This document shows positions 3,079-28,673 of a stretch of 64,000 nt of DNA, one piece after another. The DNA is from Octopus sinensis (lineage: Eukaryota). Position 1 is the first letter of the stretch. The number at the start of each line of letters is the position of its first letter. Under the pieces are notes generated by a model that was not told where the DNA came from, made no database searches, and was given only the letters and a program-made list of their open reading frames with translations. Position numbers and translations under genes: made by a program. The stretch is from the NCBI RefSeq assembly GCF_006345805.1, contig NC_043011.1:53332464-53396463 (forward strand). The letters are read 5' to 3'.

Positions 3079-3182
3079 GCACAACGATCGTTTCGACCCA
3101 TCTTGCTACTGTCCCTTATGGGTGGGACACCGTGTATCATGTTGTGTTGCATCCATTCTGTAGTCTGGGTCTCGTCAGGTAC
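3079..3182 (-). ncRNA. Type I hammerhead ribozyme motif with 77-nt branched helix II
   Basis: Minus strand: GTAC / CTGACGA / GACCCA...TGGGTC (77 nt) / GAA / ACGATCGT / T / GTGC. Internal hairpin TGTCCC-acccataa-GGGACA. GUU triplet. Confidence 0.75.
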
Positions 3183-3250
3183 ATGCATACATAAAATGGG
3201 GTCTCGATAAAGATCTTGAGTTCGGGTGGTCATGTTATTTGCCCGTCGAG

Positions 3251-3300
<50 letters not shown>

Positions 3301-3314
3301 TATATACATCATAC

Positions 3315-3347
<33 letters not shown>

Positions 3348-3356
3348 CATCATACA

Positions 3357-3404
<48 letters not shown>

Positions 3405-3434
3405 ATATATATATATATATTATATATATATATA

Positions 3435-3466
<32 letters not shown>

Positions 3467-5921
3467 TATAAGAAATATTGATTTTCTAAATCTCTCGTAG
3501 AGAGTAGAGTCAAAGAAGGAAGGACAGCGTCCATGAACCTTTATCTTTTTCATGACCTCCGAAGCTGGTGAGAGAAAGTTATTCTAAAAACTGAAAGTGC
3601 TGGACAGAATGCACGCAACAGAGTGAATTCCAGCTGAAGGAATTATAAGGACAAAATGTGGTATTAAACAAGACTGAGTCTACTATCTAAGAATACGGGA
3701 CACAAAGAGCAAGAATAAAATACCACAAGGCATCTTGTGGCATTCTTTGGCTAGACTTTCTATATTTTATCGACCACGAAAGGAAGAAAAGTAAAGTTGA
3801 TCGTGGCAAGATCTGAACTCAGAGCGCATAGAGTTAGGATAAATGCTGCAAGGCATCTCGTCTGATAACTGGACATTCTGACAATCCACCACAATACTAG
3901 AATGGTACTTTATTTTATCAGTACTAAATGAATGAAAGGCAAAGCTGATCTCAGCGAGATTTGAACTCATGAAGCAGGGATCCAAAACAAATACCGCAAA
4001 GCGTTTTCTTTTATGCTCTAAAAACTGCCTGTTTTATTTACTGTCTATGAATGTTACAATCATCGAGTAATGAAGAAATCTAAAAAACATTGAAATCACT
4101 TCCTCTCAGAAGAATATCTACAAAACATACAAGACTGTTTGTTATAGCTTTGTACTTAAATGAACTTATCACATGGAGTTGAAGGAAATGTGTGAACTAG
4201 GAGTGAAACCTGCTTTTTATAAGCCAGACAAAAGAGCTATGCGGTTTTTCACAAGGGTGAGATATTTTCAAGCATGGTGGTTAGTAGTATTCATGGTTTG
4301 AACCCATGGACTACATTAATTCAATTGTTGTTGGATCCCAAACCAGACCTGATCGAGCAAGCCTATGATCAAAAGTCTTTTCTGCCTCGACAATCCCGTT
4401 TTATATTTCCCTGGGTGCAGTGAATTACATTATCTCATCAAACGTGTCCTTCTCTAATAATTCTTGTTTTTCTACAATAATCTCATCCAAATCTAGAATG
4501 CTTTATATAGGAATATTAATTAAATCGATTCCAGTACTTGAATGGCATTTTATTTTATCAACCCCTCATCTCGGAAGGAAGGTAAAAAGTTCTCGGCATA
4601 GAGAGCAGTAGCTAAATTCTTCGGGCATTTTGTAAAACACTCAGCATCCTGATATTCCACTACTATATATAAACTCTGATTAAATCTGTAATCAAAAGAC
4701 ATTCCAGATACGCCCATCCCATTTTCTTTCTACAGGGTAGTGACTTACATAACTAAACCTATCCTTTTCCAAGATTCTTCTTTTAAAATTCCTTTCTCAT
4801 TTGTAATACTTTGTAAGATTCTTAAATCAACCTCAGTGCTTAACTAGTGTTTTGGTTTATCGACCCCAGGAGGACGAAAGGCAAAGTTGACCTGGTCGAG
4901 ATTTGAACTCAGTTCGTAAAGAGTTGTCATTAAATGTTACAAATTAACTACTTTACTCAGCCTGATCGAGCAAATCTATATTTTAAAAAACCATCCAACC
5001 ATGATCCTCTCATTTTTTTTTGGGGGGGGGGGGTCATTGTGTGCCCTGGTTGCTATCTCTAGCAGCTCAGACAAGCACACTAATCTTCTTCGTTGGCTTG
5101 AGTTAGTTCGATAGTTGTTAAGCCTTAAATGAGCAGGGCATAATCAAAGGTGCAGGAGTGGCTGTGTGGTAAATAGCTTGCTAACCTACCACATGGTTCC
5201 GGGTTCAGTCCCACTGCGTGGCATCTTGGGCAAGTGTCTTCTGCTATAGCCCCAGGCCGACCAATGCCTTGTGAGTGGATTTGGTAGACGGAAACTGAAA
5301 GAAGCCTGTCGTATATATGTATATATATATAAGTGTGTGTGTATATGTTTGTGTGTGTGTGTGTGTGTGTGTTTGTCCCCCTAGCATTGCTTGACAACCG
5401 ATGCTGGTGTGTTTACGTCCCCGTCACTTAGCGGTTCGGCAAAAGAGAGCGATAGAATAAGTACTGGGCTTACAAAGAATAAGTCCCGGGGTCGATTTGC
5501 TCGACTAAAGGCGGTGCTCCAGCAGTAAAGAGTAAGAGTATATATTTAACCGGCCGACACTGTAACGATGATCTGGAAACTTGACTGATGAGAGAAGGCT
5601 GCGAACAACCCGTCCTTGTCTTTTCCTGTCCGACTTTTGCTGTTTTTCCTGTCCGTCTTTGTATCGTTTATCTGTCCGGATGTTTTATTGTCGTCTGTTG
5701 CGTTCTTGTTCCATTTCTCTCTCTCTCTCATAGATATATATATATATATAATATATAATATATATATATATATAGATATATATAAAACTAATTGTGTCCT
5801 TCCTTTTTCAAAACAACAGGGTGTAATCTGAGGGATTTTAGCTACCATTTCCAGCAGCGACGTAGAGAGGCTCCCTAGTGCAATAATGTCAAAGTGGGAT
5901 GATTTTGAACTCAAAGTACGT

Positions 5922-5955
<34 letters not shown>

Positions 5956-6641
5956 CGACGAAATTAAATACATTAATATCATTTAATATAGTGTTCTGTT
6001 CTGCTCTGTTGTCCCGGCCACCACCACCACCACCACCACCACCAATACCACCACCACCACCATCACCACCACCATCAACCCCCATTTATTAGAAATCATT
6101 ATTAAATTGAAGGCTATACGTACTTCAGTACAATCTTGAGATGATTATTTCCTTGTGTGCCATCGAAAACAATCAAAAACCTAAAATATATAAAAGAATC
6201 TCTAATCTCTTTTAAACTCCTCTTCCCCTTCTTTCCATTCACCCGCCTTCCTCTAGATTTTTAACCGATACAGAAAAATTTACATATCATCAGAAACAAT
6301 TTATATATCTCAATGAGCCATGGTGCTGTTACGGTTATGTGTGAAGGAGGCGATTTTGTGCGTTTGTTTGAATCTTTTTGGAGGTTTTTTTTTTACTTTC
6401 CTTCTTTACCAAAAACCCCTTCTTGATTTATAATATACTTATTTTGTTTCCATTTTTAACTTCTTTCTCTCTCTCTCTCTTTTTTTTTTTTTTTAAATAT
6501 AAAAATTCAATTTCATTTTTCATCTTGTCCTGAAAAAGATGAAAAATGCCAGATACTCTGCAGAGAATGATGATTAAGAGTATGGAATACATACACACAC
6601 ACACACACACACCACACTCTCTCACACACACACATATATAT

Positions 6642-6687
<46 letters not shown>

Positions 6688-8814
6688 GAGATATATGTTA
6701 TGTGGAGGGAGGGGGAAAAACAACAACAATAATAATAATAATAATAATAGTAATAATAATAATAATAATAGTAATAATAATAATGATAATAAATATAATG
6801 ATAAAATTGAACTAATTTCACTGTTTCCTGTTTTGTTTCTTTTTACCTTTGTTATGTTCCGAGGAAAATCGAATGCATATGAAGAAATCTATCTGGATCC
6901 AAGCGTGTAAAGTAATTAAACATTCCAAGCACAACTCTCACCATGCATAAATTTTACTGGTAACTTTGATGTTGTATGTTGTAAAGGAAGATGGATAAGG
7001 AGGGAGTATTGAGGGAGGAGGAGGAAGAGCAGGGGGGAAAGAGATGAGTGAGAGCGAGGGGAATGGGAAGAGAATCTATAAGAGGTAGAGAGTATACAGG
7101 AGGGAGGGAGATAGAGAGGGGGAGAGGGGGGAAAGAGAGGAAGATGAAATGAGAGGGAAAAAATGGGACGGAAAGAGGAAAAAAGAGAGAAGAGAGAGTA
7201 CTTTGAAAGAGAAATAGTAAAGTGAATGTGTGAGAATGGGAGGAACAATTAAGATAGAGTAAAAGCAATTGAGAAGGTATTGGGGGAGGAAGTGGAAGAA
7301 TTGAGAGAGAGAGAAATTGAAAGCGAGAGTGAGAGAATAGGAAAAAGGAACTAAGAATAGAGAGAGGGGGAGGAATTATTAAGAAACGACAGAGAGAGAG
7401 GGAAGCTGTAACATTAATAAAGAAAATAGAACTAATAAGCTTCTCTAATAACTCTTAACATGGCTGGCTTGATGGGAAGCTAAAGCTTTAATTTTCGTCT
7501 TTGTAACTGATTGGGTTTTTTTGGGTTTTTTTTGGTAGGAGACGGTTTTCTCCTCTTTTTTAATATATAAAGGCTTTTATCCCCCGCGAAACTACCGAGT
7601 TTGTTACGTTTGAAAATTCTTTCAGTCAACAACATTTCGTAGCAATTGATGTTAACTTCTTTCTTTTTTCAGAGTCCGACAGGGTTGTTTTAAAAAATGT
7701 TTAGGATGACGACGACTGCCGACAACTGCCGAAGTCAGGAATGCTGCTGTTGCTGTAGTGATAATGATGGCGATGGTGGCGAAGCTAAAGCACTCCATGA
7801 TGATGGTGGTGGCGGCGATGATGGTGGGGGGGAGCTAGTAACGATAGATAGTAGTCATGATGGTGGCGACGGTGTAAAAGTCGATGGTGGGGGAAGCGGT
7901 AGTAATAATAGAGCGAAGTCATGATAATGGCGACGGTGTATAAGTCGATGGTGAGGGTATAGTGGTAATAGTTACAGCATAAATAGTGGTGGTAGTGATG
8001 CTGTGACAGAGCTGGTGGTAGTCATGGTGTTGGTGATAGCGGAGTTGCTGATTCGGTTTATAAAAGTAGTGATGCTGGTGACATTATTGGAGTTCTCCAA
8101 TATCCTGGCCATGATGTTGTATGCCTCTGTGTCTAGCAGACGATCAACTTTCCTAATGGATTCATTCTCCCACCTTGGGTTTTGCTTTTTTTTTCGTGTT
8201 CTTCCTTTTTCCTTTACCTTTCGGATTTGTTTTTATAAAGTTTCTACTCAAAATGCTGTTTGGAAAACCAAATATTTGTAAAGAGATATGTAGGAGAAGG
8301 GAAGGTGAGAGGGGGGAGAGAGAAGAAGAGCTATAGGGGGGGAGTAGAGATACAATTATGAAATGATTATGAAGGAAGAGAAATGGAGAAAGAGAAAACG
8401 GGGAAAGAGTGAAAGGAATAATGGAATAGGGGGGGAGATAGAAATAGAGAGAGATAGATAGAGTCCAAGTGAGAAAGCTTCTAGAAAGCAAGGAGGAGAA
8501 AAGAGATGAGAAGGGGAAAATAAAACGGATAGCTTAAGGGTGAGTGAAAATCAAAGAGAGAAATTTTAGGGAATGCAACTGAAAGAGAGAGAGAGTGTGT
8601 GAGAGAGAGAGAGAGAGTAAAAGGATGATAGAAGATTACTAATGGAAGGAGAGAGATTCGCAGAACCAAAGATGATACAAAATGATGAAAAAAGAAAGAA
8701 AAAAGATAACTAGGTTGAATCGTTGTTGCTATAAACGGAATGACACAGTAAAAGTACAGAAAAGAAAGGGTTTAAAGAAGGCATATTGTTGCACATATTT
8801 TGGTTTTTATGTTT

Positions 8815-9640
8815 TCGTTTTTACTTGCTTCGGTCATTTGACTACAGCCATACTGGGGCACCCCCTTGGAGAATGTTTTAGTCAAATGAATCGATCCCAA
8901 TGTTTATTTTCTTTTCTTAGGTTGGTATTTATTCTATCGGTCTCTTTTGCTGAACTGCTAAGTTACATGGTTTTAAACACACCAACGCCAGTTGTCAAGC
9001 GATGGTGGGGGACAAACACAGACACAAAGACATATACACACACACACATTTATATATGATGGGCTTCTTTCAGTTTCTTATTTTTTTATTGCCTACAAGG
9101 GGCTAAACATAGAGGGGAAAAACAAGGACAGACAAAGGGATTAAGTCGATTACATCAACGCCATTGCATAACTGGTACTTAATTTATCGACCCCAAAAGG
9201 ATGAAAGGCAAAGTTGATCTCAGCGGAATTTGAACTCAGAACGTAAGGGCAGACGAAATACCTATTTCTTTACCACCCACAAGGGGCTAAACACAGAGGG
9301 GACAAACAAGGACAGACAAACGGATTAAGTTGATTATATCGACCCCAGTGCGTAACTGGTACTTAGTTTATCGACCCCGAAAGGATGAAAGGCAAAGTCG
9401 ACCTCGGCGGAATTTGAACTCAGAACCTAAGGGCAGACGAAATACTGCTAAGCATTTCATCCGGCATGCTAACGTTTCTGCCAGCTCGCTGCCTTTCAGT
9501 TTCTGCATACCAAATCCACTCACAAGGCTTTGGTCGGCCCAAGGCTATAGTAAAAAACACTTGCCTAAGAAACTACACAGTGGGACTGAACCGGGAACCA
9601 TGTGGTTGGGAAGCAAGCTTCTTACCACACAACCATGTGT
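8815..9640 (-). mobile_element. SINE A interrupted by a tandem dimer of SINE B
   Basis: The insertion at 9078-9493 is flanked by a 10-bp TSD, TTTCAGTTTC (9068-9077, 9494-9503). Confidence 0.8.
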
Positions 9641-10224
9641 GTACATATATGTTTATATCCATGTGTAGTTGTCTTTGGGTTAATTATTTGTCCCCCACCA
9701 CTACTTGACATTTGGTGTGGTTTGGTTTGTTTACGTCTCTCTTAACTTAGCAGTTCAGCAAAATGAGATCAAAAGAGTACCGGACACTCAGAAAAACAAA
9801 AAAGAATAAAAATAGATACTTAAATTAATACGCTTGACTAAAACCTCAAGGCTGTACCCCTGCATGGCTGCATTCCAATAACTGGAACAAGGAAAGAATA
9901 AGAGATAAAACAGGAAATAGAAGGCTTGCATTCATTCATTCAAAGAACAACTATTTGGAATGGTATAAAAGCTTCATATCTTTACTCTCTTACTCTCATT
10001 TACACTTTTACTTGTGTCAGTCATTTGACTGCGGCCATGCTGGAGCACCGCCTTTAGTCGAGCAAATCAACCCCCGGGACTTATTCTTTGTAAGCCTAGT
10101 ACTTATTCTATTGGTCTCTTTTGCTGAACGGCTAACTTACGGGGACGTAAACACACCAGCATTGGTTGCCAAGTGATGTTGGGTGGACAAACACAGACAC
10201 ACAAACATATACACACAAATACAT

Positions 10225-10261
<37 letters not shown>

Positions 10262-10363
10262 CACATACATATATAGTTAATCCAAACATGAAAACACAAC
10301 AACGCGAGGACGTGGAACAAGTATAGTGTTATAGGATGCTCAGAAAGGAAAGAAAGAAGGAGG

Positions 10364-10398
10364 ATTTAACGTTTCGAGCGGAGCTCTTCATCAGAAAC
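10364..10398 (-). ncRNA. Minimal type I hammerhead-like motif (PLE type)
   Basis: Minus strand: GTTT / CTGATGA / A / GAGC-tcc-GCTC / GAA / ACGT / T / AAAT. Helix I is weak (4 bp), there is an extra A after the core, and helix III is a loopless palindrome. Confidence 0.55.
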
Positions 10399-10464
10399 AT
10401 AGAAAAAGGAAAGATCCAAGGAAGGGAAGACGGAGGAAAAGAATAGCCAACAATATACATGCGG

Positions 10465-10509
<45 letters not shown>

Positions 10510-11274
10510 TACAACAGGCTTCTTTCAGTTTCCGTCAACCATATCCACTCACAAGGCTTTGGTTGGCCTGAGACTATAGTAGAAGACACTTGACCAAGGT
10601 TCCATGCAGTGGGACTGAACCTGGAACCATGTGGTTCGTAAGCAAGCTACTTACCACACAGCCACTCCTATGCCTATAATTACTAAAATTTAAAAACACA
10701 ATATGGACATACTTATTTTCTTGCACTCAGGGTTGGCCAAAAATAACTGAAGTTTTTACATTATATAACCTCCTTGTTTGTAGTTAATATTTTCTTCACA
10801 CGGAAAATTAATTCCAAATAAATTCCCCATTGACCATAAAGTAGGAAATTTTCTAAACTTTTTACTGAAGTGAGAAAAAGAAAAAAGCAAAAACGAACAA
10901 AAATAAAACAGGAAAGCAGGGCTTAGGAATTCAAACTTAAAAAGAAACATTTGTAAATGATGAAGCTTATTTTCGCCTAATTGGATATGTATAAAATAAA
11001 CTAAAATTATCAAGAAGCTGGTAAGCAAAAAATCCCATCCATGCATCGTCAACAAATACACTCCCTGTGAGTCATAATTTTGTCTCTGGAATGATGGAAG
11101 AAAAGTTATTTTCTTCATCTTTATTTTTGCCTGTAATTTTTTTTCGTGCTTTTTGTTTTTGTTTTGCTTTTCATTTTACATATGATTACCAGCTTCATTT
11201 CACCAACAACAGCAGCAGCAGCAACAGCAGCAGTAGAAGCAGCACTGTTGTCATCATCTCTTATTATTGTCGTC

Positions 11275-11600
11275 ATCATTATTGTTATCATCATCATCAT
11301 CATCACTATCATCATCATCATCATCATCATCATCGTCACCATCATTGTCACCATTATCGCCATCACCATCATCATCACTGCCATCATCATCATCACTGCC
11401 ATCATCATCATCACGTCCATCATTGTCATCATCATCGTTACAGTATTCAGTGCCATCATCATCATCATAATCACTGTCACCGTCTTCAATATCATTACTG
11501 TCATTATCATCTTTGTTGTTGTCATCATCATCATCATCGCCACTAGTATTGTCACCATTATTATCTCCATCAACTCTCTTCTCATCAGTGTTGTCATCAT
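11275..11600. repeat. (ATC)n-based degenerate trinucleotide array
   Basis: Direct reading. A similar array lies at 47280-47790. Confidence 0.95.
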
Positions 11601-12010
11601 TTAAGGTGCAAATTTGCTGAATCACAGCGCATGGAACAAAATGTATTGTGATATTCATTCCAGGTCCCTTCACTCCGTATCCAAATCCCACCAAGGCCAT
11701 GCACAAGGTAATAACAAGGCATGCGATGGCAAACTGTATATAAGGGCAAAACAGAAACAGATTAATTCTCTCTGCTTCTACGTAGCAGCGCTTGCTGAGC
11801 ATGTTTCACTGGCTGGGCCCGTCTGCATGTTGTACCTCCAGAGGCAATGTGTCCACACTAATGGAGATACAACACCACTCACACAGCTCGAGATGGTTGC
11901 TGAGAGCAACGCACTTCACCTGTTCTGTGAAACTTGTAAATAAACCGGTTGTAAATTGCATTTGTACTTAAAGACTTCTTTCTTCGCCTGCCGGAGCCTG
12001 AACTACATCT
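11600..12010 (-). mobile_element. Possible decayed L1/Tx1-type ORF2 C-terminal fragment
   Basis: SKRCYVEAERINLFLFCPYIQ resembles a degenerate C-x2-C-x7-H-x4-C knuckle. Frame-disrupted. Confidence 0.3.
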
Positions 12011-13600: not shown

Positions 13601-13645
13601 ATGATATATATATTATATATATATGTATATATATATTATGTATAT

Positions 13646-13697
<52 letters not shown>

Positions 13698-17280: not shown

Positions 17281-18019
17281 ACCCACTACACTCTCGGAGT
17301 GGTTGGCGTTAGGAAGGGCATCCAGCTGTAGAAACACTGCCAGATCTGATTGGCCTGGTGCAGCCTTCGGGCTCCCCAGACCCCAGTTGAACCGTCCAAC
17401 CCATGCTAGCATGGAAAGCGGACGTTAAATGATGATGATGATGATGATGACACATACATACACACTCACACACACACATATGCATTTGAAAGTATGCATT
17501 GTCTAATTAGTGTGTATGTATATTGTTATCTTTCTATCTATATGTATGTGTGTGTTGTGTGTGTGTGTGTGTGCATACATGTGTGTGTGTTTATGTATAT
17601 AGATATACATGTGTTTATATATATAAACATGCACACCACACATACAAATGAAAATTTGTTGTTTTGGTTAACTAGTGTGTGTTCACTCCCCCCCCCGCCA
17701 CCACCAATGTATATGTATATATATATATACACGCATACACATACTTACAGTCCTATCCCTTACTTCATTCACCAACCATGACCCACCCAACAGTCAACCA
17801 TATCACCATTCCACCATACCACCGTACCACCATACCACCATACCACCATACCACATGCCATTTTCTCCATCAATCCATCAATCTACCTGAAGTTTCAACA
17901 AAGGAAAACCAAGAAAAACCACAATTCTTCATTACTTTATCTTCTCAACTTACCAATTTTACCATTGTCCTTTTTTCACTTTCTTCATCATTCCACCCAA
18001 CCCCTCGTCCCCCTTCTAT

Positions 18020-18021
18020 AC

Positions 18022-18061
<40 letters not shown>

Positions 18062-18116
18062 ATCTCTCTATCTCTCTATCTCTCTATCTCTATCTATCTG
18101 TCTGTCTTTCTATCTA

Positions 18117-18171
<55 letters not shown>

Positions 18172-18216
18172 CTCTCTCTATCTCTATCTCTATCTATCTG
18201 TCTATCTTTCTATCTA

Positions 18217-18287
<71 letters not shown>

Positions 18288-18319
18288 CTATCGATCTATC
18301 TATCTATCTATTTATCTAT

Positions 18320-18355
<36 letters not shown>

Positions 18356-18406
18356 GTATCTATCTATCTGTCTATCTATCTATCTACCTACCTACCTACC
18401 TATCTA

Positions 18407-18458
<52 letters not shown>

Positions 18459-18585
18459 CCTACCTACCTACCTACCTACCTACCTATCTATCTCTATCGA
18501 TCTATCTATCTATCTATCTATCTATCCATCTATCTATCTATCTACCTACCTACCTACCTACCTACCTACCTATCTATCTCTATCG

Positions 18586-18648
<63 letters not shown>

Positions 18649-18740
18649 CATCTATCTATCTATCTATCTACCTACCTACCTACCTACCTACCTATCTATC
18701 TCTATCGATCTATCTATCTATCTATCTATCTACCTACCTA
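18020..18740. repeat. Long compound (TCTA)n/(TCTG)n/(CCTA)n microsatellite
   Basis: Direct reading. It explains the 386-aa and 347-aa 'IYLS' ORFs. Confidence 0.97.
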
Positions 18741-19789
18741 TCTATCTCCGTCTCTCTCTCACCCTATTTCATTCTCCTTCATTCAAAATCTCTACATTTT
18801 TCCTTTACACCATTTTCCCAGCTACTTTATTCCTATTAAGCATCTCTTTCTTTCATTCTTGATTTCCTGCTTTCATCTTCCATTATATAATTTCTCTTTT
18901 GCAATTTTCATTATTTTCCGGTTTCCATTCTCATTTCGTTTTCTCTCCTCCCACTTTCTAAATATTTTCTTGTTGTTCCTCATATCCAACCACCAATCTT
19001 TTAGGTGATGATTTTTTTTTTGTTGTATGTGTGTGTGTATACTTCTTTTTCCATTTTATTTCATAGCTTTTTCTTTGTTTTTTTTAACCATTCCATGTTC
19101 TCTTCTTTTACGATTATTACACCAAACCATAACACTATTTAAACAGACACTTTCTCAGAAAACGCTAACTCTGTTTCTTGTGTTATTCCATCTTATTCAT
19201 TTCTTTTTGTTTTCTATCCAATTTTATTCTGTTTTCTTTCTTTTTTTCTTTTTCTTTTTTGTCTTTTTGCTATGTTTAATTGCAGCTTCTGATAATTCTA
19301 AAGGAACAATAATTTCCTGTCTCCAAAGATTAAGTATTTTAGAGGTTGTCTGCTTAATCTATTATATAAGTATTGAAATAAACCTCTTTATTTTTCGTTG
19401 CTCAATTGTGAAATGAAACAATTGCAGAAGGAAATATGAAGAGGTTTAGAATTGAAGGGTTTCACCAAAATGCTTAGCTTAAGATGGATTATAAAAGACG
19501 CCGTAACAACAACGAAAATAATAACTATATTAAATGAAGTAAGAGAGAAAGAGAAAGAGAGAGAGAGAGAGAGGAAAAGAAAGGAACAAAGAAAGAAACA
19601 AAAATAATGTAAGATATTTTTCAGACAATCAATGTTCACTAAGAAAACATGGTGTGTTTTTGTTGTTGGTTTCTTTTTTTTTTTTTTTGGATTTTGTGTT
19701 TGTTATTTTTGTTTTTTATTTATTGGTTTCGGCTTCGTTTGTTATTCTTGAGAATTACCCTTTCTTGAGTATATGTAGCATGTGCATGT

Positions 19790-19834
<45 letters not shown>

Positions 19835-19893
19835 TATATGTGTTTGTATATGTGTTTGTGTGTGTCTATTTATCTCTCTATCTATCATCTATC

Positions 19894-19933
<40 letters not shown>

Positions 19934-19955
19934 GTCTATCTATCTATCTTTCTTC

Positions 19956-20028
<73 letters not shown>

Positions 20029-20758
20029 AGTCTGTCTGTCTTTCTATCTGTATTTATACACACACTTACACACACTCAAGCACACACACATATATACAAA
20101 AACATAATTATATGTAATTATTTTCATATGCAATTGCATGTGAGTGTGTGTATATGTATGGGCTTGAATATATATATATACATGCACACTACATACGTAC
20201 ATACATGCACACACACACGCATGCTGAAAAAGCTGCTTATCAATTTGATCGCAGATAATGTTATCAAAACTTTGGGTATTGTTATCTAAATTTTTAGGTA
20301 AATCTGTACACCACCATTAATAATCACAAGAGAGATTGAAAGAAAAGTGCCATTTGCAACAGAGACATGGAATGGTGATGATGATGGAATTCTCTTGTAA
20401 TGGTAACAGTGGTGGTGGTGGTGGTGGTGGTGGTGGTGACGGCGGCAGCGGTAGTGGTGATGGCAGTGGCGGCAATGATAGTGGCGGTAACAGTGGTGGT
20501 GGTGGGGATGATGGGGTTGGTGTTGGTGGTGGTGGTTGTGGAATCCTATGTTTGTGTTTGGAGTGGAGATACTTGTGAATTGAAATTGGTCAGTAATAGG
20601 TGTAGGAATCGCTGTGTTGTCAAGAGGCTCGCTTTGCGACCATGAGTTTCAGGTTCTGTCCCATGGTGTGACAACATCAAGAATTGTCTTCTACTATAGC
20701 CCCAGGCCAATCAATGCCTTGTGAGTAATAGACAAAAGCAATGTGGAAATCTATTGTA

Positions 20759-20795
<37 letters not shown>

Positions 20796-21678
20796 CATGT
20801 AAGTATGCGTGTATGTTTTCTGTTTGTGTTTGTCCCACCCATGGGTACACATGGAAGACGGACACTAAATAATGATGATGGTACACACACACGTGAGTGC
20901 ATGCATGTGTGTGTATTTGTATGTGATTGTGTTTGTGTGTGTGTGTGTGTGTATTATGCATATATGTCAAGCTAAGTGCACTGTAAATTGTTCTAATCCT
21001 GCACAACACTCTTGGTCAAATAAACCCAACAACTGATATAGGAATCAGGGTGTCCTCTGGTTCAGCCCGACTTTCAGTTCGTATGTTTCAGCCATGATCA
21101 CTGGAAAATTTTTTGGCACTTTGGACAAATGTTTTCCTAAATCTAATTGATATCATGCTATTTTTAATTGGCACACTGTGAAGGTAACCTACGCTAACTC
21201 TGCTAATTTAGAGCAGCTTATGCACCGCATAAACAATAGTAAAATGCAACAAAGGTTCAGTAATTACCTACTAGATCTATTGAACATATGCATCTAAATG
21301 AAAAACACTAATTAAGGCCAAATTGTTATAGTAGAGTGTTACAAGCAGTTGGGTTATTATGTCACATGTGAATATGAGTTTTTGTTGTGTGTATATATGT
21401 GTGTGTGTGTGTATCTAGATATATTTCTTTACTGCCCACAAAGGGCTAAACATAGAGAGGACCGGACAAACAAGGACAGACAAAGGGATTAAGTCGATTA
21501 CAACGACCCCAGTGTGTAACTGGTACTTTATTTATCGACCCCGAAAGGATGAAAGGCAAAGTCGACCTCGGCAGAATTTGAACTCAGAACATAACAGTGA
21601 ACGAAATACGGCTACGCATTTCGCCCGGCGCGCTAGCGTTTCTGCCAGCTTGCCGCCTTCAGTGTGTATCTATATATA

Positions 21679-22850
21679 CAGGGTGCATAAGGTATTTGAG
21701 GACATAACTTTTTTGGGTCATTGCTGGATTTTTTTTGCTCACTCTGTATAATCTTTGTTTCAGAAAATAATAATGGCAGACCCTCAGCTTACTCAAGAAA
21801 TGAAGAGGCATGCTGTTATTGTGGTTTTGAAGGCTGTGCATAGTGATTTAGAAATATCTCAATTATTAAAAGTTACCAGGTCTTTCATCTACAAATTTTG
21901 TAAGGAGCTAGAGACTGAAGATGGAAATGTATCACCAGTATCAAAGCATAAAAAGCATTCTAAACATTCCGAAATCATCAGAACACCTGAATTTATCCTG
22001 CAAGTTCAACAGACCATTGATTACAATCCCAGAAAGTCCATGAGGTCAATTGCAAAATATCTCCATGTGTCAGAAGGAACAGTCAGAAATGTTGTCCACA
22101 AAAACATCAGATATAGTCTTAAATGATGAGGAAAGGTCAATTTGTCAGAAAAAGCAAAAGAATTTCACTGCATCAGATTTAAAAGGCTCTTAAACAAGCT
22201 GAAAAATCCATCAGAAGATTAAATTTGGTTTTTCTCAAGCAAGAAAAACTTTGACCAAGATCAAAAGTTAACAGAAGAAATGACAGATGGTTATGTGCAG
22301 ACTCTTTTGAAGTTCCATACAAAATTTCCTGCAACTGTAATGGTTTTAGGGGTTGTTAGGACATGTGATGCCTCCATACTTCTTTCCACAAGGCCTTAGA
22401 GTTAACTCTGCCACCTACATTGATATTCTGGAAATAATTGTTAAGCCTTAGATAAACAGTGTATGCCATGGAAGGCCATATGTGTGTCAGTAAGACTCTG
22501 CTCTATCACACATGGCTCTAGTAACACAAGTATTGATGGCTGAAAATTTTCATGATCACATAACCCCTAACATTTGGCCTCCTAATTCCCCAGATCTCAA
22601 TCCATTGGACTATGCCCATTAACACCAAAGATTCTTTGAAAGCTGCCATAGTCAGAGTAATGTCCAAAATGAACCAGGACCACTTGATTCAAGCACAAGA
22701 GAAGATTTAGATCTCGTATAGAAGCATTTGTTGAAGCTGAAGGTGGCTTTATTGAATAACATTATAGAAAAGGTTTATTCTTATCCTCATAGCAATTTTT
22801 GATAAGTAAAGTTATTATGTGTTATTATATATCTGTTTTTTTTATAAGCA
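21679..22850 (+). mobile_element. Decayed Tc1/mariner DD37D (maT-type) transposon, 3' end truncated
   Basis: TA then CAGGGTGCAT terminus. HTH-type N-terminal ORF 21755-22126. Catalytic tail QxD-37aa-D ending WPPNSPDLNPLDY at about 22575-22613. Stops and frameshifts are present. Confidence 0.85.
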
Positions 22851-23141
22851 TAAGGGCCGGTTTCCCGGTTTCCTTGGCGTATAGGTTCCCTACCTGAACA
22901 GGACGCCGGTCCATCACAGGCGAGCTGCAAGATGCAGGAGGAAAGAGTGAGAGAAAGTTGTGGCGAAAGATTCAGCAGAAGTTCACCATTACCTTCTGCC
23001 AGAGCCGCGTGGAACTTGGGTGTTTCGCTCATAAACACACACATCGCCCGGTCAGAGATTCAAACCCATGATCCCTCGACAGCGAGTCCACTGCTCTAGC
23101 CACTAGGCCATGTGCCTCCACACACACATATGTCTGTGTGT

Positions 23142-23187
<46 letters not shown>

Positions 23188-23306
23188 ATAATATATATAT
23201 TATATATTTATACATACATATACATATATGTACACCGGAGTAAACACATAAATGTGAAACAAGGTGGAAAAAAAGAGTACTCAAATACCAGTGGTAGAGT
23301 AAAAAA

Positions 23307-23344
23307 CTGTCCGATGAACGGCAACATGAAACTCAGAGTAACAG
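23307..23344 (+). ncRNA. Degenerate type I hammerhead motif
   Basis: CTGT / CCGATGA (U4C change) / ACGGCAACAT (helix II poorly paired) / GAA / ACTC-a-GAGT / A / ACAG. Helices I and III pair, but the core is mutated. Confidence 0.4.
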
Positions 23345-23386
23345 GTTTGTAGATTTTCTGCTGCTTTAAATAAAGTATATATGTAT

Positions 23387-23428
<42 letters not shown>

Positions 23429-24131
23429 ATATATATATAAATATAAACTTATGTTGAGAGAGAGACAGAGAGACTGCCACATACATAAACCCTTGTACAC
23501 ACACATGCATCATGTGTATATATGTTTTACGTTTAAAACGGTGTGTCTATAATGCAAAATGTATTGCCATGATAAACGATAATATGCATGTATATATGTT
23601 TTCTATGTGCAAGATCATGTGCACATGAATACAGGTGTGGTTTGATTGATGTATACGAATATGTAAAACTAGGTGAGTTTATAGGTCTTGCTATACATAT
23701 GTATGCTTAGAAACACCTATGAGTATGTGCATCTGTCTATATATATGCACATAAGTTTGTGTATTCATGTGTGTATGTGTGTGTGTGTCTATGATGGTGT
23801 GTGTATATGTATGTATGCCTGTATACATATATATATATATATGTATACAGACATACATATATATATGCATACACACATACATACATACATACATACACAT
23901 ATATATATATATGTGTATGTATGGGGGGATGCATATATAAATATATGCACACTGCACACCTTCATATTTATTTACAAGCATTTATATGTGTGAATACACA
24001 CATATATAGAGTATGTGTGTGTGTGCATATGCATACACAAACAAACAAACACACACATATACGTATATATTCTTATATATATGCATGCATATATATGTAA
24101 ATATATGCATATATGTATATAAGTATACAAC

Positions 24132-24163
<32 letters not shown>

Positions 24164-24174
24164 TATATACTTAT

Positions 24175-24218
<44 letters not shown>

Positions 24219-24303
24219 ATACTTATATCTATATATGTATGTAAATGTATATATATATATATATATATATATATTGTATACTTATATCTATATATGTATG
24301 TAA

Positions 24304-24342
<39 letters not shown>

Positions 24343-25045
24343 TACTTATATGTGTATATAATATATATATATATATATATACACATATATACTATATGTG
24401 TATATATATATATATATATCTATCTATAGAATAGATAGATAGATATGTTTTGTGAGGTGGTGTGGGTGTCGGTGGGTGAGGGTATGTGTGCATATGCATA
24501 AAGTAGGTGATAATTATAAAGAACTATGCTGAATTAAGTGGAATAACTAATAAGTTGTATCGTTATTTCATGAATTGGTAACTGATTAAACGGTTGACTT
24601 TTGCCTAGTTTAAAGTCTTATTATTAATGGCTGGCTCCACATAGAGCGAAAAAGGGAGAGAGAGAGAGAGAGAGACAGAGACAGAGAGAGAGAGAGAGAG
24701 AGACAGGGAATGAGAGATTATATGTGGAAAGTTATTGCATCACCACCACCACCACCACCACCAAAAGCAACAATAACAATAACAACTACAATAACAACAA
24801 CAACAGTAGGAGAAAAAGCGATCAGTTTTTACTTTTTCAAAAAGTATTGATTTCACTGGAACTGGCAGTGAGAAGGCTTCCATTTTGGCATCGGCGTTTC
24901 CACAATTAAATCAATTAAAGATAGAGTTTGATTTGGAACCAATATTCATCTAAGAGGGAAATCAATTCCTCCAAATCTCCAAATTCCTTCGAATAACGAA
25001 GGTATTCGTGAGCCGTGCTATTAACTCTCCAGGTTTCTCTCTCTC

Positions 25046-25076
<31 letters not shown>

Positions 25077-25567
25077 TGCTCTCTTTCTCATTTTTTTCTT
25101 TTCTAGTCTTTGTTCCTTGTTCCTTTCTTTCTTGCTCTCTTTTCTGCCAGTCGATTTTTCTTTCCCTTTCACTCTCTCTCTCTCTTTATTACTGTCTCTC
25201 TCTCTCTTTATTACAGTTTCTCTCTCTCTTTTTATTATTGTCTCTCTCTCTCTCTCTTTATTACCATCTCTCTCTCTCTTTCTCTCTCTCACGTTTTCTG
25301 TCTCTCTCACTCTCACTCATTCTCTCTATATCATTCTCTCTTTCTGCCTTCCTTTCTTTCTCTCTCTCTCACTCTTTCTCTCTATCTCCTTCTCTCTCAC
25401 TTTCTCTCTTCCTTCCTTCCTTCCTTTCTTTCATTTTCTTACTTTCTCTTACTCTCTTGCACTCTTTTTTCTTCCCCCCATTCTCTCTCTCTATCTCTCT
25501 CTTGCTGTGTCTTTATCTCTTTCTTACTCTCTTTCTCTATCTGACTCTCTGTCATTATCTCTCTCTC

Positions 25568-25620
<53 letters not shown>

Positions 25621-26364
25621 CTTATTCCTCTGCCTGTCCCTCTCATATATTAATGGTCCAAAATGGTGACTTATGCTAGTTTATTCGTGTTTTATTACGT
25701 GTGTGTGTGTGTGTGTGTGTATGAGTGTTTGCATGTGTGTTTGTGCTTGTGTTTGTGTGTGTGTATAACTGTCAAATGTACGAATGCATGTTTGTGTATA
25801 CGTGTCCACGTTAAATATTATTATTTAAATATTATTTTACTTCGATAGGCAAAAACAAAACAGACCAATTTACAGAGTAAACACATACACATATAATATA
25901 TACACGTATACTCATACTCACATACTCGTACTCACATACACACATACATCACAAAACATGTAAATACTATACCCAATATACGCATATATATATGCATACA
26001 TAGCATGCATATATGTGTATACATATATACATACACATATATTTGTAAACTGTACATATACATACATATGCATACATACATGCACAAAAGTATATGCATA
26101 TAAGCACATGCTTTATATGTATATACATATGTATATGTGTGAGTGTGTATATATATATATATATATATTTATGTGCGTCCGCGTGTGTGTTGTATGTGTC
26201 TATGGTATATGTATATATATGTATATATATATATAATATATATATTATATATAATATATATATATATATATATATTATAAATCCATACATACATATATGT
26301 GTGTGGTGTGTGGGGTGTATATATATATAGATCCTGTCTTTGTCTTTTGTTTTTCTGTAAATTT

Positions 26365-26414
<50 letters not shown>

Positions 26415-26434
26415 TATATAATATATAACATTTA

Positions 26435-27638
26435 CTGGGTGGGTAAGATAATTGACGACAGGTTTATGTTTATAAAAAACCAGATATATAACAGATAATA
26501 ACTTTATTTATCAAAAAATGCTATGAGGATAAAAATAAACCTTCTTTTCTAGAATGTTATTCAATAAAGCCACCTTCAGCTTCAACAAATGCTTCTATAC
26601 GAGATCTAAATCTTCTCTTGTGCTTGAATCAAGTGGTCCTGGTTCATTTGGACATTACTCTGACTATGGCAGCTTTCAAAGAATCTTTGGTGTTAATGGG
26701 TATAGTCCAATGGATTCAGATCTGGGGAATTAGGAGGCCAAATGTTAGGGGTTATGTGATCATGAAAATTTTCAGCCATCAATTCTTGTGTTTCTAGAGC
26801 CATGTGTGATAGTGCAGAGTCTTACTGACACACATATGGCCTTCCATTGCATACACTGTTTATCTAAAGCTTAACAATTATTTCCAGGACTTTAATGCAG
26901 GTGGCAGAGTTAACTCTAAGGCCTTGTGGAAAGAAGTATGGAGGCATCACATGTCCTAACAACCCCTAAAACCATTACAGTTGCAGGAAATTTTGTATGG
27001 AACTTCAAAAGAATCTGCACATAACCATCTGTCATTTCTTCTGTTAACTTTTTGATCTTAGTCAAATTCTTTCTTGTTTGAGAAAAGCCAAATTAAATTT
27101 TCTTCAAGTGGATTTTTCAGTTTGTTTAAGAGCCTTTTAGATCTGATGTAATGATTTTCTTTTGCTTTTTCTGACAAATTGAACTTTCCTCATCATACAA
27201 GACTTATATTTGATGTCTTTGTGGAGAACATTTCTGATAGTTCCTTCTGACAAATGGAGATCTTTTGCAATTGACCTCATGGACTTTCTGGGATTGTAAT
27301 CAATGGTCTGTTGAACTTGCTGGATAAATTCAGGTGTTCTGATGATTTCAGAGCATTTAGAATACTTTTTATGCTTTGATACTGGTGATACATTTCCATC
27401 TTCAGTCTCTAGCTTCTTACAAACTTTGTAGATAAAATATCTGGCAAATTTTAAAAATTGAGATATTTCTAAATCACTATGCTCAGCCTTTATAACCACA
27501 ATAACAGCATGCCTCTTCATTTCTTGAGTAAGCTGAAGGTCTGTGATTATTATTTTCTGAAACAAAGATTATACAGAGTGAGCAAAAAATGCAGCAATGA
27601 CCCAAAAAGTTATGTCCTCAAATACATTATGCACCCTG
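26435..27638 (-). mobile_element. Second copy of the same DD37D transposon, both termini present
   Basis: Reverse-complement homolog of 21679-22850. ORF 27137-27565 matches the N-terminus. Imperfect TIRs are flanked by TA at 26433-26434 and 27639-27640. Confidence 0.85.
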
Positions 27639-28567
27639 TATATACATAGGCACAGGTGAGGCTGTGGTAAGAAACCAGCTTCCCAATCACATGGTTGTGG
27701 ATTCAGTCCTACTGTACATATCCTTTGGCAAGTGTCTTCTACTATAGCCTCAGGCTGACCAAAGACTTGTGAATTGATTTGGTGGACAGAAAATGAAAGG
27801 AGCCTGTCATATACATCATCATCATCATCGTTTAACGGGCATTTTCCGCGCTAGCACGGGTTGGATGGTTCGACCGGGGTCTGGAAAGCCAGGGGCTGCA
27901 CCAGGCTCCAGTCTGATCTGGCAGTGTTTCTACAGCTGGATGCCCTTCCTAACGCCAACCACTCCGTGAGTGTAGTGGGTACTTTTTATGTGCTTTTTAC
28001 ATATATATATAGGTGCAGGAGTGGCTGTGTGGTAAGTAGCTTGTCTACCAACCACATGGTTCCGGGTTCATTCCCACTGCGTGGCACCTTGGGCAAGTGT
28101 CTTCTACTATAGCCTCGGGCCAACCAAAGCCTTGTGAGTGGATTTGGTAGACGGAAACTGAAAGAAGTCCGTCGTATATATGTATATGTATATATGTGCG
28201 TGTGTGTGTTTGTGTGTATGTGGTTGTCCCCTAGCATTGCTTGATAACCGATGCTGGTGTGTTTATGTCCCCGTTACTTAGCGGTTCGGCAAAAGAGACC
28301 GATAGAATAAGTACTGGGCTTACAAAAGAATAAGTCCCGGGTTCGAGTTGCTCGATTAAAGGCGGTGCTCCAGCATGGCCGCAGTCAAATGACTGAAACA
28401 AGTAAAAGAGTAAAAGAGTAAAGAGTATATATATATATATAGTTAAGATAATAAAATGAATGGCTTATACCTGGTAGCTTACTGGTAAAGCAGGGTCACT
28501 TTCACAATGTTCATTATGTATATGGTAAATGAAGGACAAAAGATGGCAGATAGAAGAATTTTTATCA

Positions 28568-28673
28568 ATCACAACAATTGTTTCGTTACATCAAGCATCA
28601 ATCCCTCATTGGTGGGATACTTAACAACTGGTTCAGGAGCATCTGACCATGCTGATGTATTTCGTCAGGTGAT
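28568..28673 (-). ncRNA. Type I hammerhead ribozyme motif with 77-nt branched helix II
   Basis: Minus strand: ATCAC / CTGACGA / 77-nt domain (TACATCA..TGATGTA, GCAT..ATGC, ATCCC-accaatga-GGGAT) / GAA / ACAATTGT / T / GTGAT. The first two pairs of helix II are mismatched (A.C, A.A). Confidence 0.7.

What the first reader, a model, noticed from the sequence alone, without database searches (positions are those of the whole stretch)
3079..28673. Diverged family of hammerhead ribozymes with a conserved 77-nt branched helix II domain
Seen in sequence: two minus-strand motifs 25 kb apart (3079-3182 and 28568-28673) share the layout helix I - CTGACGA - 77-nt domain - GAA - 8-nt palindromic helix III - GUU - helix I. 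By hand the 77-nt domains align without gaps at 39/77 identity. Pairing is kept by compensatory changes: helix II C-G/C-G becomes T-A/A-T; the inner hairpin is GTCCC-acccataa-GGGAC vs ATCCC-accaatga-GGGAT; helix III is ACGATCGT vs ACAATTGT; helix I is GTAC/GTGC vs ATCAC/GTGAT. GATGC (domain positions 19-23) and the downstream ATAAAAA and CCATCTT sit at identical offsets. Established: hammerheads need the CUGANGA/GAAA core, and PLE-type minimal hammerheads usually have a short helix II and a palindromic helix III that works as a dimer. Inference: this is an old, structure-constrained ribozyme class whose large helix II insert may supply tertiary contacts, a protein-binding site or a regulatory module. 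I do not recognise it as a described family.
Basis: partly seen in the sequence, partly recalled or inferred. Interest (0 to 1): 0.9.

Follow-up and report, generated by a model that had tools for sequence, protein, structure and literature searches.

The report
Retrotransposon hammerheads with oversized helix II
The two motifs are real hammerhead ribozymes, but they are worn-out 3' ends of two families of Penelope-like retrotransposons present in hundreds to thousands of copies; what is unusual is that their helix II has grown to a conserved 77-nt branched domain.

Summary
Their 77-nt domains align without gaps at 39/77, against 19.5±3.8 for shuffles.

The interpretation needs correcting. These are not two copies of a free-standing ribozyme gene. 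Each is the 3'-terminal module of a dispersed repeat:
- Family A has hundreds of copies, an ~830-nt full length and no ORF, so it looks non-autonomous.
- Family B has at least 800 copies. Its longer copies carry, upstream of the ribozyme, the thumb, a CxCX5C linker and a GIY-YIG-like endonuclease, as described for the Hydra clade of Penelope-like elements (PLEs).

Both families show PLE hallmarks: a fixed 3' end with variable 5' truncation, an optional 3' tail, head-to-head inverted pairs and insertion into (TA)n. A third, young family (C) lies at 51113-51326 and has a 55-nt helix II.

The ribozyme is the known PLE type: open helix I, palindromic helix III, probably active as a dimer. The large branched helix II is not described in the papers I could read. 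A related marine element has the ordinary 17-nt version, so the expansion appears lineage-specific.

A third of family A copies carry core A9U, so amplification probably did not need cleavage. The domain may instead help reverse-transcriptase recognition; that is inference.

Verdict: a new variant of a known kind.

The parts
3031..3251 (-). Family A element copy. It is 5'-truncated (~221 nt of an ~830-nt non-coding element) and ends in ...TTACTTAAATGATTA, followed by (TA)n.
   Evidence: Alignment of 30 genomic copies and their consensus; sequence.
3078..3183 (-). Hammerhead A: helix I 3183-3179 with 3082-3078; core CUGACGA 3178-3172; GAA 3094-3092; palindromic helix III ACGAUCGU 3091-3084; cut expected 3' of U3083.
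   Evidence: RF00163, 27.5 bits, E 1.3e-4; R1, 114.6 bits.
3095..3171 (-). 77-nt helix II domain of copy A: a 6-bp basal stem, a GA/GA internal loop, a distal 4-bp stem (2 pairs lost in this copy), a central ~30 nt, and the hairpin GUCCC-ACCCAUAA-GGGAC.
3252..3470 (.). (TA)111 microsatellite abutting the 5' end of copy A; this is the target site. A short (TA)n also follows the 3' end at 3019-3030.
28442..28869 (-). Family B element copy, 5'-truncated (~428 nt). It includes the optional 3' tail at 28442-28514.
28568..28673 (-). Hammerhead B: helix I 28673-28669 with 28572-28568; core 28668-28662; GAA 28584-28582; helix III ACAAUUGU 28581-28574; cut expected 3' of U28573. The 10.1-11.1 and 10.2-11.2 pairs are broken.
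   Evidence: R1, 103.9 bits.
28585..28661 (-). 77-nt helix II domain of copy B, with the hairpin AUCCC-ACCAAUGA-GGGAU.
28870..29006 (.). (CTAT)34 microsatellite at the 5' side of copy B. A (TA)8 run at 28426-28441 follows the tail.
51113..51326 (-). Family C (young): a hammerhead with a 55-nt helix II (51245-51191), core 51252-51246, helix III ACAUAUGU 51187-51180, and a cut expected 3' of C51179. It is flanked by 71-nt inverted arms (51113-51183 and 51256-51326), which amounts to a head-to-head copy of its own 3' tail.
21005..21172 (+). Fragment of a PLE ORF, 58.7% identical over 63 aa to the thumb-to-linker region of family B.
   Evidence: tblastn.

Best explanation
Each motif is the hammerhead ribozyme built into the ~165-nt 3'-terminal module of a Penelope-like retrotransposon (PLE). 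That module runs helix I, core, helix II domain, palindromic helix III, GUC cut site, AAUAAA, CCAUCUU, 3' end.

Family B is the autonomous type. An ORF remnant with the reverse-transcriptase thumb, a CxCX5C linker and a GIY-YIG-like endonuclease lacking the CCHH motif lies ~350-570 nt upstream of the ribozyme, which fits the Hydra clade. Family A is a short (~830 nt), ORF-less element that shares only this 3' module, so it is most likely a non-autonomous passenger of such an element.

New copies were made by target-primed reverse transcription into (TA)n, starting at one of two 3' ends (with or without a tail). This left 5'-truncated and head-to-head copies. The two window copies are relics of that kind.

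In the RNA, a single ribozyme cannot close helix III, because an 8-nt palindrome cannot form a hairpin. Cleavage at GUC is therefore expected only when two copies pair, in tandem, inverted or multimeric transcripts (inferred from the literature, not shown here). Genomic copies extend 50-130 nt past the cut site, so the template that was copied had not been cut at its 3' ribozyme.

The 77-nt helix II extension is a lineage-specific enlargement. I think it most likely (about 35-40%) doubles as the handle by which the element's reverse transcriptase recognises its template. The reasons are that it is what autonomous and non-autonomous families share, and that a family A lineage with a crippled core (A9U) still amplified while keeping the domain. 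This step is inference. The confidence given (0.8) is for the identification as PLE hammerhead relics, not for the role of the domain.
For: Repeat families:
- Family A: 672 first-look candidates; the scored copies are 82-88% identical.
- Family B: 1922 candidates. A 25-mer from the central domain gives 800 hits at <=2 mismatches against 0 for the control.
- The hairpin 16-mer gives 336 exact hits against 1 for the control.

PLE hallmarks:
- A fixed 3' end with variable 5' ends.
- An optional 3' tail in about a third of copies.
- Head-to-head inverted pairs.
- (TA)n flanks.

Link to the endonuclease (EN):
- Three family B copies align contiguously over 1.4-1.65 kb up to the 3' end.
- They carry the EN-like ORF.
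- Independent assembled contigs show the EN followed by the ribozyme.
- The CxCX5C linker and the absence of CCHH match the Hydra clade description, as do (TA)n insertion and hammerheads (PMC8557442).
- The EN profile finds 1757 proteins. One of them, P0125, has the RT motifs DIKDFHPSI and YRDDGL plus the thumb in front of the EN.
- An AlphaFold model (pLDDT 88.5) has two GIY-YIG nucleases (T4 EndoII and I-TevI) as three of its four top fold matches, but weakly, at E 0.5-1.6.

Ribozyme:
- The core, G10.1-C11.1 and the GUC cut site are present in the consensus sequences.
- Helices I and II and the hairpin are 87.6% paired, against 30-44% for slid controls, with 10 pairs changed on both sides.
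- The palindrome is kept through double changes: ACGAUCGU, ACAAUUGU, ACAUAUGU.

Family A as non-autonomous: four long copies share one 5' end next to microsatellites. They have no ORF and no EN similarity within the element.

A9U lineage: 9 of 29 sampled copies. Exact 27-mers genome-wide number 6 (U9) against 13 (A9).
Against:
- Pfam and a PDB sequence profile gave nothing for the EN or RT fragments, and the fold match is not statistically significant.
- No cleavage or transcript data were available.
- The role of the domain rests on analogy with LINE/SINE 3'-tail sharing and on the A9U lineage. A9U might retain some activity.
- The central 30 nt has no supported fold, and RNAalifold on its own recovers only the basal helix II.
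- Only three family-level lineages were compared, so covariation events are few.
Confidence: 0.8

Rival explanations
1. One reading: an old, free-standing, structure-constrained ribozyme class of the host. The two loci would be functional copies whose helix II insert supplies tertiary contacts or a regulatory or protein-binding module.
For: The layout and the compensatory changes between the two copies are real. Copy A still passes a strict hammerhead descriptor.
Against: - Hundreds to thousands of dispersed copies decay neutrally at 78-88% identity.
- They show 5' truncation, 3' tails, (TA)n targets and an upstream EN ORF.
- Copy B has lost the two pairs next to the core.
- A third of family A has A9U.
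Confidence: 0.03
2. Non-LTR retrozymes: short non-coding tandem repeats whose transcripts self-cleave, circularise and spread as small circular RNAs.
For: - Family A is non-coding and carries a type I hammerhead.
- Animal retrozymes are reported to derive from PLE pLTRs (bioRxiv 10.64898/2026.07.22.740005; PMC7229834).
Against: - Copies are dispersed, 5'-truncated and extend past the cut site to a fixed 3' end or tail.
- There are no 170-400-nt tandem units.
- The one apparent tandem is a 1.16-kb segmental duplication at 99% identity.
- The ribozyme is the minimal PLE type, without loop 1-loop 2 contacts.
Confidence: 0.1
3. The 77-nt insert is a tolerated passenger in helix II with no function of its own. 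Families A and B would resemble each other there only through shared ancestry.
For: - Hammerheads tolerate any extension of helix II beyond the first pairs (established knowledge).
- The central 31 nt is only 15/31 identical between the consensus sequences and has no supported fold.
- Family C has a different, 55-nt version.
Against: - Sequence outside the module cannot be aligned between A and B. Inside it, the length is exactly 77 in both and the hairpin is 15/18 identical, with a G-C to A-U swap at its base.
- The A9U lineage kept the domain intact.
Confidence: 0.25

Closest known systems
Minimal hammerheads of Penelope-like elements (Cervera & de la Peña 2014, PMC4209133; Lünse, Weinberg & Breaker 2017, the latter not readable here)
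   Same: - Type I topology with an open 4-5-bp helix I and no loop 1.
- A short palindromic helix III, implying action as a dimer.
- G10.1-C11.1 present.
- Location in the terminal repeat or 3' region of a PLE.
- Many heterogeneous genomic copies.
   Different: - Helix II is 77 nt (55 nt in family C) and branched, against 6-8 bp with a small loop.
- There is no extra unpaired nucleotide between A9 and 10.1.
- Helix III is a full 8-nt palindrome.
Hydra clade of PLEs (Craig et al. 2021, PMC8557442)
   Same: A C-terminal GIY-YIG-like endonuclease without CCHH, a CxCX5C linker, insertion into (TA)n, a hammerhead present, and aquatic invertebrate hosts including molluscs.
   Different: - The clade's hammerheads were found with ordinary descriptors. 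The core-only searches that paper describes (for Naiad and Chlamys elements) used core spacers of 7-17 nt, with half-cores noted at 35-50 nt, and a descriptor of that kind would miss a 77-nt spacer.
- The RT motifs (DKT, RWK) and the element length could not be checked here.
Related RT-EN element on a marine metagenome contig (L076)
   Same: A homologous EN with the CxC...C linker. The hammerhead lies ~55 nt after the ORF, has a near-palindromic helix III, and AAUAAA follows the cut site.
   Different: Helix II is only 17 nt (4 bp plus a 7-nt loop). This shows that the large domain is a lineage-specific enlargement.
Hammerhead-bearing non-autonomous elements: Schistosoma Sm-alpha SINE-like elements and metazoan non-LTR retrozymes (PMC7229834)
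   Same: A non-coding repeat carrying a type I hammerhead and co-existing with autonomous PLEs, like family A.
   Different: Those have canonical hammerheads with loop-loop contacts. They occur in tandem or have pol III promoters, and retrozymes form circular RNAs. Family A is dispersed, 5'-truncated and shares the PLE 3' end.
LINE/SINE pairs that share a 3' tail recognised by the LINE reverse transcriptase (a functional analogy recalled from established knowledge)
   Same: An autonomous and a non-autonomous family share only the 3'-terminal module.
   Different: It belongs to a different retroelement class. Recognition of this module by a PLE RT is untested.

Membership tests
Hammerhead ribozyme, type I (Rfam RF00163, clan CL00010) | Conserved core CUGANGA ... 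GAAA with an NUH cleavage triplet | tested here: met
   Both window copies have CUGACGA, GAA-A and GUU. The family consensus sequences have CUGAUGA (family A) or CUGA(A/U/C)GA (family B) and GUC.
Hammerhead ribozyme, type I (Rfam RF00163, clan CL00010) | Helices I and II flanking the core, kept by compensatory change | tested here: met
   87.6% of cells are paired, against 30-44% for slid controls. Three helix I pairs and three to four helix II pairs changed on both sides between families. RNAalifold recovers the basal helix II independently.
Hammerhead ribozyme, type I (Rfam RF00163, clan CL00010) | Score at or above Rfam's gathering threshold | tested here: not met
   27.5 and 28.6 bits against 34 for family A. 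No Hammerhead_1 match was reported for family B copies (window copy B at E<=10; loci L045, L049, L051 at E<=0.01). An ordinary PLE minimal hammerhead (L076) is also missed, so this is a limit of the model rather than evidence against membership.
Hammerhead ribozyme, type I (Rfam RF00163, clan CL00010) | Site-specific self-cleavage | not testable with these tools
   Needs in vitro transcription or mapping of RNA ends.
PLE minimal hammerhead (Cervera & de la Peña 2014) | Open short helix I and a short palindromic helix III that cannot fold alone | tested here: met
   Helix I is 5 bp. The 8-nt palindromes are ACGAUCGU, ACAAUUGU and ACAUAUGU. Cofolding of copy A forms the intermolecular helix III.
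PLE minimal hammerhead (Cervera & de la Peña 2014) | Helix II of 6-8 bp with a small loop and an unpaired nucleotide 5' of it | tested here: not met
   Helix II is a 77-nt (55-nt in family C) branched domain, and G10.1 follows A9 directly.
PLE minimal hammerhead (Cervera & de la Peña 2014) | Lies in the terminal repeat or 3' region of a PLE, on the sense strand | tested here: met
   The EN ORF lies ~350-570 nt upstream on the same strand in L061-L063, L071 and L072.
Penelope-like element, Hydra clade (Craig et al. 2021) | C-terminal GIY-YIG endonuclease lacking the CCHH motif | tested here: inconclusive
   The motifs VY..(10-11 residues)..YIG..R..H..E..N are present with no second Cys. Pfam gave no hit. 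The best fold matches are the GIY-YIG nucleases T4 EndoII and I-TevI, but only at E 0.5-1.6 and TM 0.44-0.51.
Penelope-like element, Hydra clade (Craig et al. 2021) | CxCX5C linker upstream of the endonuclease | tested here: met
   CSCRDKSKC and CSCREKSKC. The consensus of 48 relatives is CNCRxKxxC.
Penelope-like element, Hydra clade (Craig et al. 2021) | Insertion into (TA)n; 5'-truncated and inverted copies; optional 3' tail | tested here: met
Penelope-like element, Hydra clade (Craig et al. 2021) | Reverse transcriptase with the clade's motifs (DKT, RWK) in one ORF with the EN; element shorter than 3 kb | not tested
   Only the thumb remnant (P0002) is present in the copies held. A distant homologue, P0125, shows an RT-EN fusion. 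No further genome sequence could be fetched.
Non-LTR retrozyme (Cervera & de la Peña 2020) | Tandem 170-400-nt repeats, each with a canonical type I hammerhead | tested here: not met
   Copies are dispersed. The only tandem is a 99% identical 1.16-kb segmental duplication.

The most novel reading that the evidence does not exclude
The branched 77-nt helix II is a functional RNA module grafted into the ribozyme. It would be the cis-acting handle by which a PLE reverse transcriptase selects its template, borrowed by a non-autonomous partner. It might also couple protein binding to whether the ribozyme cuts. That would make it the first defined 3' recognition element of a Penelope-like element, and a natural protein-gated hammerhead.
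Probability: 0.25. Interest if true: 0.6.

Novelty: new variant of a known kind. Interest (0 to 1): 0.35.

Why it matters
How PLEs choose their RNA template, and what their universally present hammerheads are for, are open questions. In the one in vitro system studied, ribozyme mutants still insert (PMC11167929).

This genome offers a natural experiment:
- An autonomous and a non-autonomous family share only a ribozyme-containing 3' module with an unusually large, length-conserved helix II.
- One lineage amplified with a damaged catalytic core.
- A young family (97-99% identical copies) could be tested directly.

There is also a practical lesson. Descriptor searches with short core spacers, and Rfam thresholds, miss such hammerheads. 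Ribozyme censuses in molluscs may therefore be undercounts.

Tried and rejected
- **Whole-genome model search.** After no more genome sequence could be fetched, so family C and further divergent families could not be sampled. Covariation therefore rests on three lineages.
- **Protein databases.** Pfam and a PDB sequence profile gave nothing for the EN or RT fragments.
- **Weak R1 hits.** The hits at L017 734-855 and L066 802-905 looked like a fourth family. They are junctions of 5'-truncated inverted copies.
- **Apparent tandem array.** The array in L017/L018 is a 99% identical segmental duplication, not a pLTR arrangement.
- **Pseudoknot idea.** AUGG (domain positions 16-19) might pair with CCAU in the hairpin loop, with U-A in family A and C-G in ancestral family B. 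I set this aside. It rests on one change at two CpG sites, which mutate easily.
- **Alternative pairing.** GGAU with (G/A)UCC competes with the hairpin in the family B minimum-energy fold. Only a one-sided change supports it.
- **Rfam negatives.** These are not evidence of novelty, because an ordinary PLE hammerhead is also missed.
- **Literature not held.** Lünse et al. 2017 and the supplements of Craig et al. 2021 were unavailable, so a prior description of large-helix-II PLE hammerheads cannot be excluded.
- **Species check.** A search to confirm the species from assembly statistics found nothing.
Full report
**1. The observation.** Read on the minus strand, window 3183-3078 and 28673-28568 both have the type I hammerhead layout. 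That layout is a 5-nt helix I strand, CUGACGA, a 77-nt segment closed by complementary ends, GAA, an 8-nt perfect palindrome beginning with A and ending with U, a U as residue 17, and the complementary helix I strand.
- The two 77-nt segments are 39/77 identical without gaps. In 20,000 shuffles the mean was 19.5, the sd 3.8 and the maximum 35.
- The downstream ATAAAAA and CCATCTT lie at offsets +8 and +27 in both copies.
- A strict descriptor hits the window once (copy A) and none of 200 shuffled windows.
- Rfam's Hammerhead_1 model recognises copy A below threshold, at 27.5 bits against a gathering score of 34 (E 1.3e-4 in a 500-nt scan), and does not report copy B.

**2. Both motifs belong to dispersed repeats.** The window is part of a 2.72-Gb eukaryotic assembly. 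The assembly statistics recall *Octopus sinensis*, but that is from memory only.
- Copy A has 672 first-look candidates genome-wide, and the scored copies are 82-88% identical.
- Copy B has 1922 candidates at 78-86% identity.
- A 25-mer from the centre of the family B domain occurs 800 times at up to 2 mismatches, against 0 for the reversed control.
- The shared hairpin 16-mer occurs 336 times exactly, against 1 for the control.
- In 58 sampled copies the ribozyme region is almost always exactly 113 nt between the same anchors. Most copies carry scattered mutations, including in the core, as expected for neutrally decaying insertions. Only 7 of the 60 sampled loci pass the strict descriptor.

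**3. The repeats are Penelope-like retrotransposons (PLEs).**
- *Truncation pattern.* Within each family the 3' end is fixed while the 5' end varies from about 100 nt to more than 1.4 kb upstream.
- *Optional tail.* About a third of copies continue past the common 3' end into a family-specific tail. It is ~70 nt in family B, and the window copy B has it at 28442-28514. Two alternative 3' ends are the PLE "tail" signature, explained by two reverse-transcription start sites (PMC11167929).
- *Inverted pairs.* Copies often sit head to head with a second, 5'-truncated inverted copy, as drawn for PLEs in PMC8557442.
- *Target site.* All three window insertions, and many sampled ones, abut (TA)n or related microsatellites.
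- *Upstream ORF in family B.* Three family B copies align contiguously for 1.4-1.65 kb up to the 3' end. On the ribozyme's strand they carry an ORF remnant. Its sequence includes ...HKPNDHIKYINVASTNPP... (the thumb region), then CSCRDKSKCPL, then VYKCTVHARGGPYIYIGQT..FKNRYRNH.
- *Independent contigs.* Contigs assembled from public runs show the same endonuclease-like ORF followed 350-460 nt later by the ribozyme.
- *Homologues.* A profile of this domain finds 1757 proteins. One of them, P0125, has the reverse-transcriptase motifs DIKDFHPSI and YRDDGL and the thumb in front of the linker and endonuclease, with CxxC before the conserved E.
- *Clade features.* The CxCX5C linker, the absence of the CCHH motif, (TA)n targeting, the presence of hammerheads and aquatic invertebrate hosts including molluscs are the stated features of the Hydra clade (PMC8557442 section 11).
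- *Fold evidence is weak.* Pfam does not see the domain. An AlphaFold model (pLDDT 88.5) finds two GIY-YIG nucleases, T4 EndoII and I-TevI, as its best coherent matches, but only at E 0.5-1.6. The fold assignment is therefore supported weakly and the motif assignment well.

**4. Family A looks non-autonomous.** Four long copies share one 5' terminus about 830 nt from the 3' end, next to microsatellites. They contain no long ORF and no similarity to the endonuclease within the element. The family A and B consensus sequences align only from helix I to about 45 nt past the cut site, at 66/113 identity in the ribozyme region and 25/49 in the tail. Upstream sequence cannot be aligned.

**5. A third family in the window.** My model picked up a weak hit at 51170-51260.
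- It is a hammerhead with CUGAAGA, a 55-nt helix II whose base resembles family A (CUGCA-AAUGGA ... GGGAC-UGCAG), the palindrome ACAUAUGU and a GUC cut site.
- Its family is young, at 97-99% identity with 1763 candidates.
- Here it lies between 71-nt inverted arms that are 97% complementary. These arms are an inverted copy of its own 3' tail.

**6. The ribozyme and its large helix II.**
- *Compensatory changes between families.* Helix I has three pairs changed on both sides. The basal helix II has C-G to A-U, a GA/AG internal loop replaced by U-A and C-G, and C-G to U-A. The hairpin GUCCC/GGGAC becomes AUCCC/GGGAU. Overall 87.6% of cells pair, against 30-44% when partners are slid.
- *The palindrome is kept through double changes.* G3/C6 becomes A3/U6, and A4/U5 becomes U4/A5. 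This argues for selection on self-complementarity, that is, on pairing between two ribozymes, as proposed for PLE hammerheads (PMC4209133; PMC6765202).
- *Predicted folds.* Family A folds as a three-way junction at -28.6 kcal/mol, z = -4.6. In family B an alternative pairing competes.
- *Limits.* RNAalifold on the noisy copy alignment recovers only the basal helix II. The central ~30 nt keeps GGAUGC, AAC and GUUG but has no supported fold. All of these are comparisons of three family masters, so the number of independent events is small.
- *Comparison with the literature.* In the papers I could read, a "long" helix II means 6-8 bp. The core-only searches in PMC8557442 (applied there to Naiad and Chlamys elements) used core spacers of 7-17 nt and noted half-cores at 35-50 nt.
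- *Comparison with a relative.* A related RT-EN element on a marine contig has an ordinary 17-nt helix II.

The enlargement therefore appears lineage-specific and undescribed in what I could read. I could not read Lünse et al. 2017 or the supplements of Craig et al..

**7. How it most likely works.**

*Shown:*
- the elements' anatomy and their PLE hallmarks;
- that genomic copies extend 50-130 nt beyond the cut site, so the copied template was uncut at its 3' ribozyme;
- that a lineage with the core change A9U makes up about a third of family A. It is 9 of 29 sampled copies, and exact 27-mers number 6 against 13.

*From established knowledge:* A9 is a conserved core residue. PLE hammerheads cleave poorly and only as dimers. 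In the one PLE studied in vitro, ribozyme mutants still insert.

*Inferred:*
- a lone 3' ribozyme stays off because helix III cannot close, which protects the template;
- pairing of two copies in tandem or inverted transcripts allows cutting;
- the 77-nt domain is kept because it serves template recognition by the reverse transcriptase rather than catalysis. It is the part shared by the autonomous and non-autonomous families, and it is retained by the lineage with a damaged core.

I put about 0.35-0.4 on that last step. The alternative, that the domain is a tolerated passenger, I put at about 0.25.

**8. State of the two window copies.**
- Copy A keeps the core, helix I, the palindrome and a 6-bp basal helix II, but has lost two pairs of the distal stem.
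- Copy B has lost the G10.1-C11.1 and 10.2-11.2 pairs.
- Both are 5'-truncated (about 221 nt and 428 nt).

They are relics, not genes.

**9. Verdict.** This is a new variant of a known kind, of moderate interest to people who work on ribozymes and retroelements. Nothing here called for a referred step.

Noticed in passing
window 51113-51326: A young hammerhead-bearing repeat (family C; other genomic copies are 97-99% identical to it over the 137-nt ribozyme-plus-tail part) forms a near-perfect hairpin. It has 71-nt inverted arms that are 97% complementary, and the 72 nt between them are exactly the ribozyme core, its 55-nt helix II and its palindrome. Two other loci align over the whole 211 nt at 84-85%. 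If transcribed, it would give a long double-stranded RNA.
   Followed up: partly
family A copies, loci L004, L005, L011, L014, L017, L020, L021, L024, L025; genome-wide counts: About a third of family A copies share the core change A9 to U (CTGATGTG). Exact 27-mers number 6 (U9) against 13 (A9). A lineage with a damaged catalytic core therefore kept amplifying.
   Followed up: partly
window 3075-3069, 28565-28559, 51176-51166 (minus strand): An AATAAA-like signal lies 8-10 nt after the predicted cut site in all three families and in the marine relative L076. It may be the element's polyadenylation signal.
   Followed up: no
window 32635-32707 (+): A tRNA-Arg (anticodon UCU) gene, 72.2 bits in Rfam, also called by ARAGORN.
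   Followed up: no
window 21752-22126 (+): An open frame with a helix-turn-helix of the kind found at the N-terminus of transposases (HTH_23, 27 bits). It is probably a DNA-transposon remnant.
   Followed up: partly
window 21005-21172 (+): A fourth PLE fragment: 58.7% identity over 63 aa to the thumb-to-linker region of the family B ORF, with no ribozyme detected downstream.
   Followed up: no
window 17700-20100 and 59300-60300: Long low-complexity arrays: tetranucleotide CTAT-type repeats that translate as SIYLSIYL, and trinucleotide repeats. With the many (TA)n tracts they make up much of the window. They also give spurious microRNA-family hits in Rfam at E-value thresholds.
   Followed up: no
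loci L017/L018 (G000:C12:68893794-68898091): A 1.16-kb segment containing a truncated family A copy is duplicated in tandem at 99% identity, in at least three units. This is a recent segmental duplication, not a PLE tandem insertion.
   Followed up: yes
locus L076 (TARA metagenome scaffold), 1353-1405: A related RT-EN ORF is followed 55 nt later by an ordinary small PLE hammerhead with a 17-nt helix II and a near-palindromic helix III. Rfam does not detect it either.
   Followed up: partly
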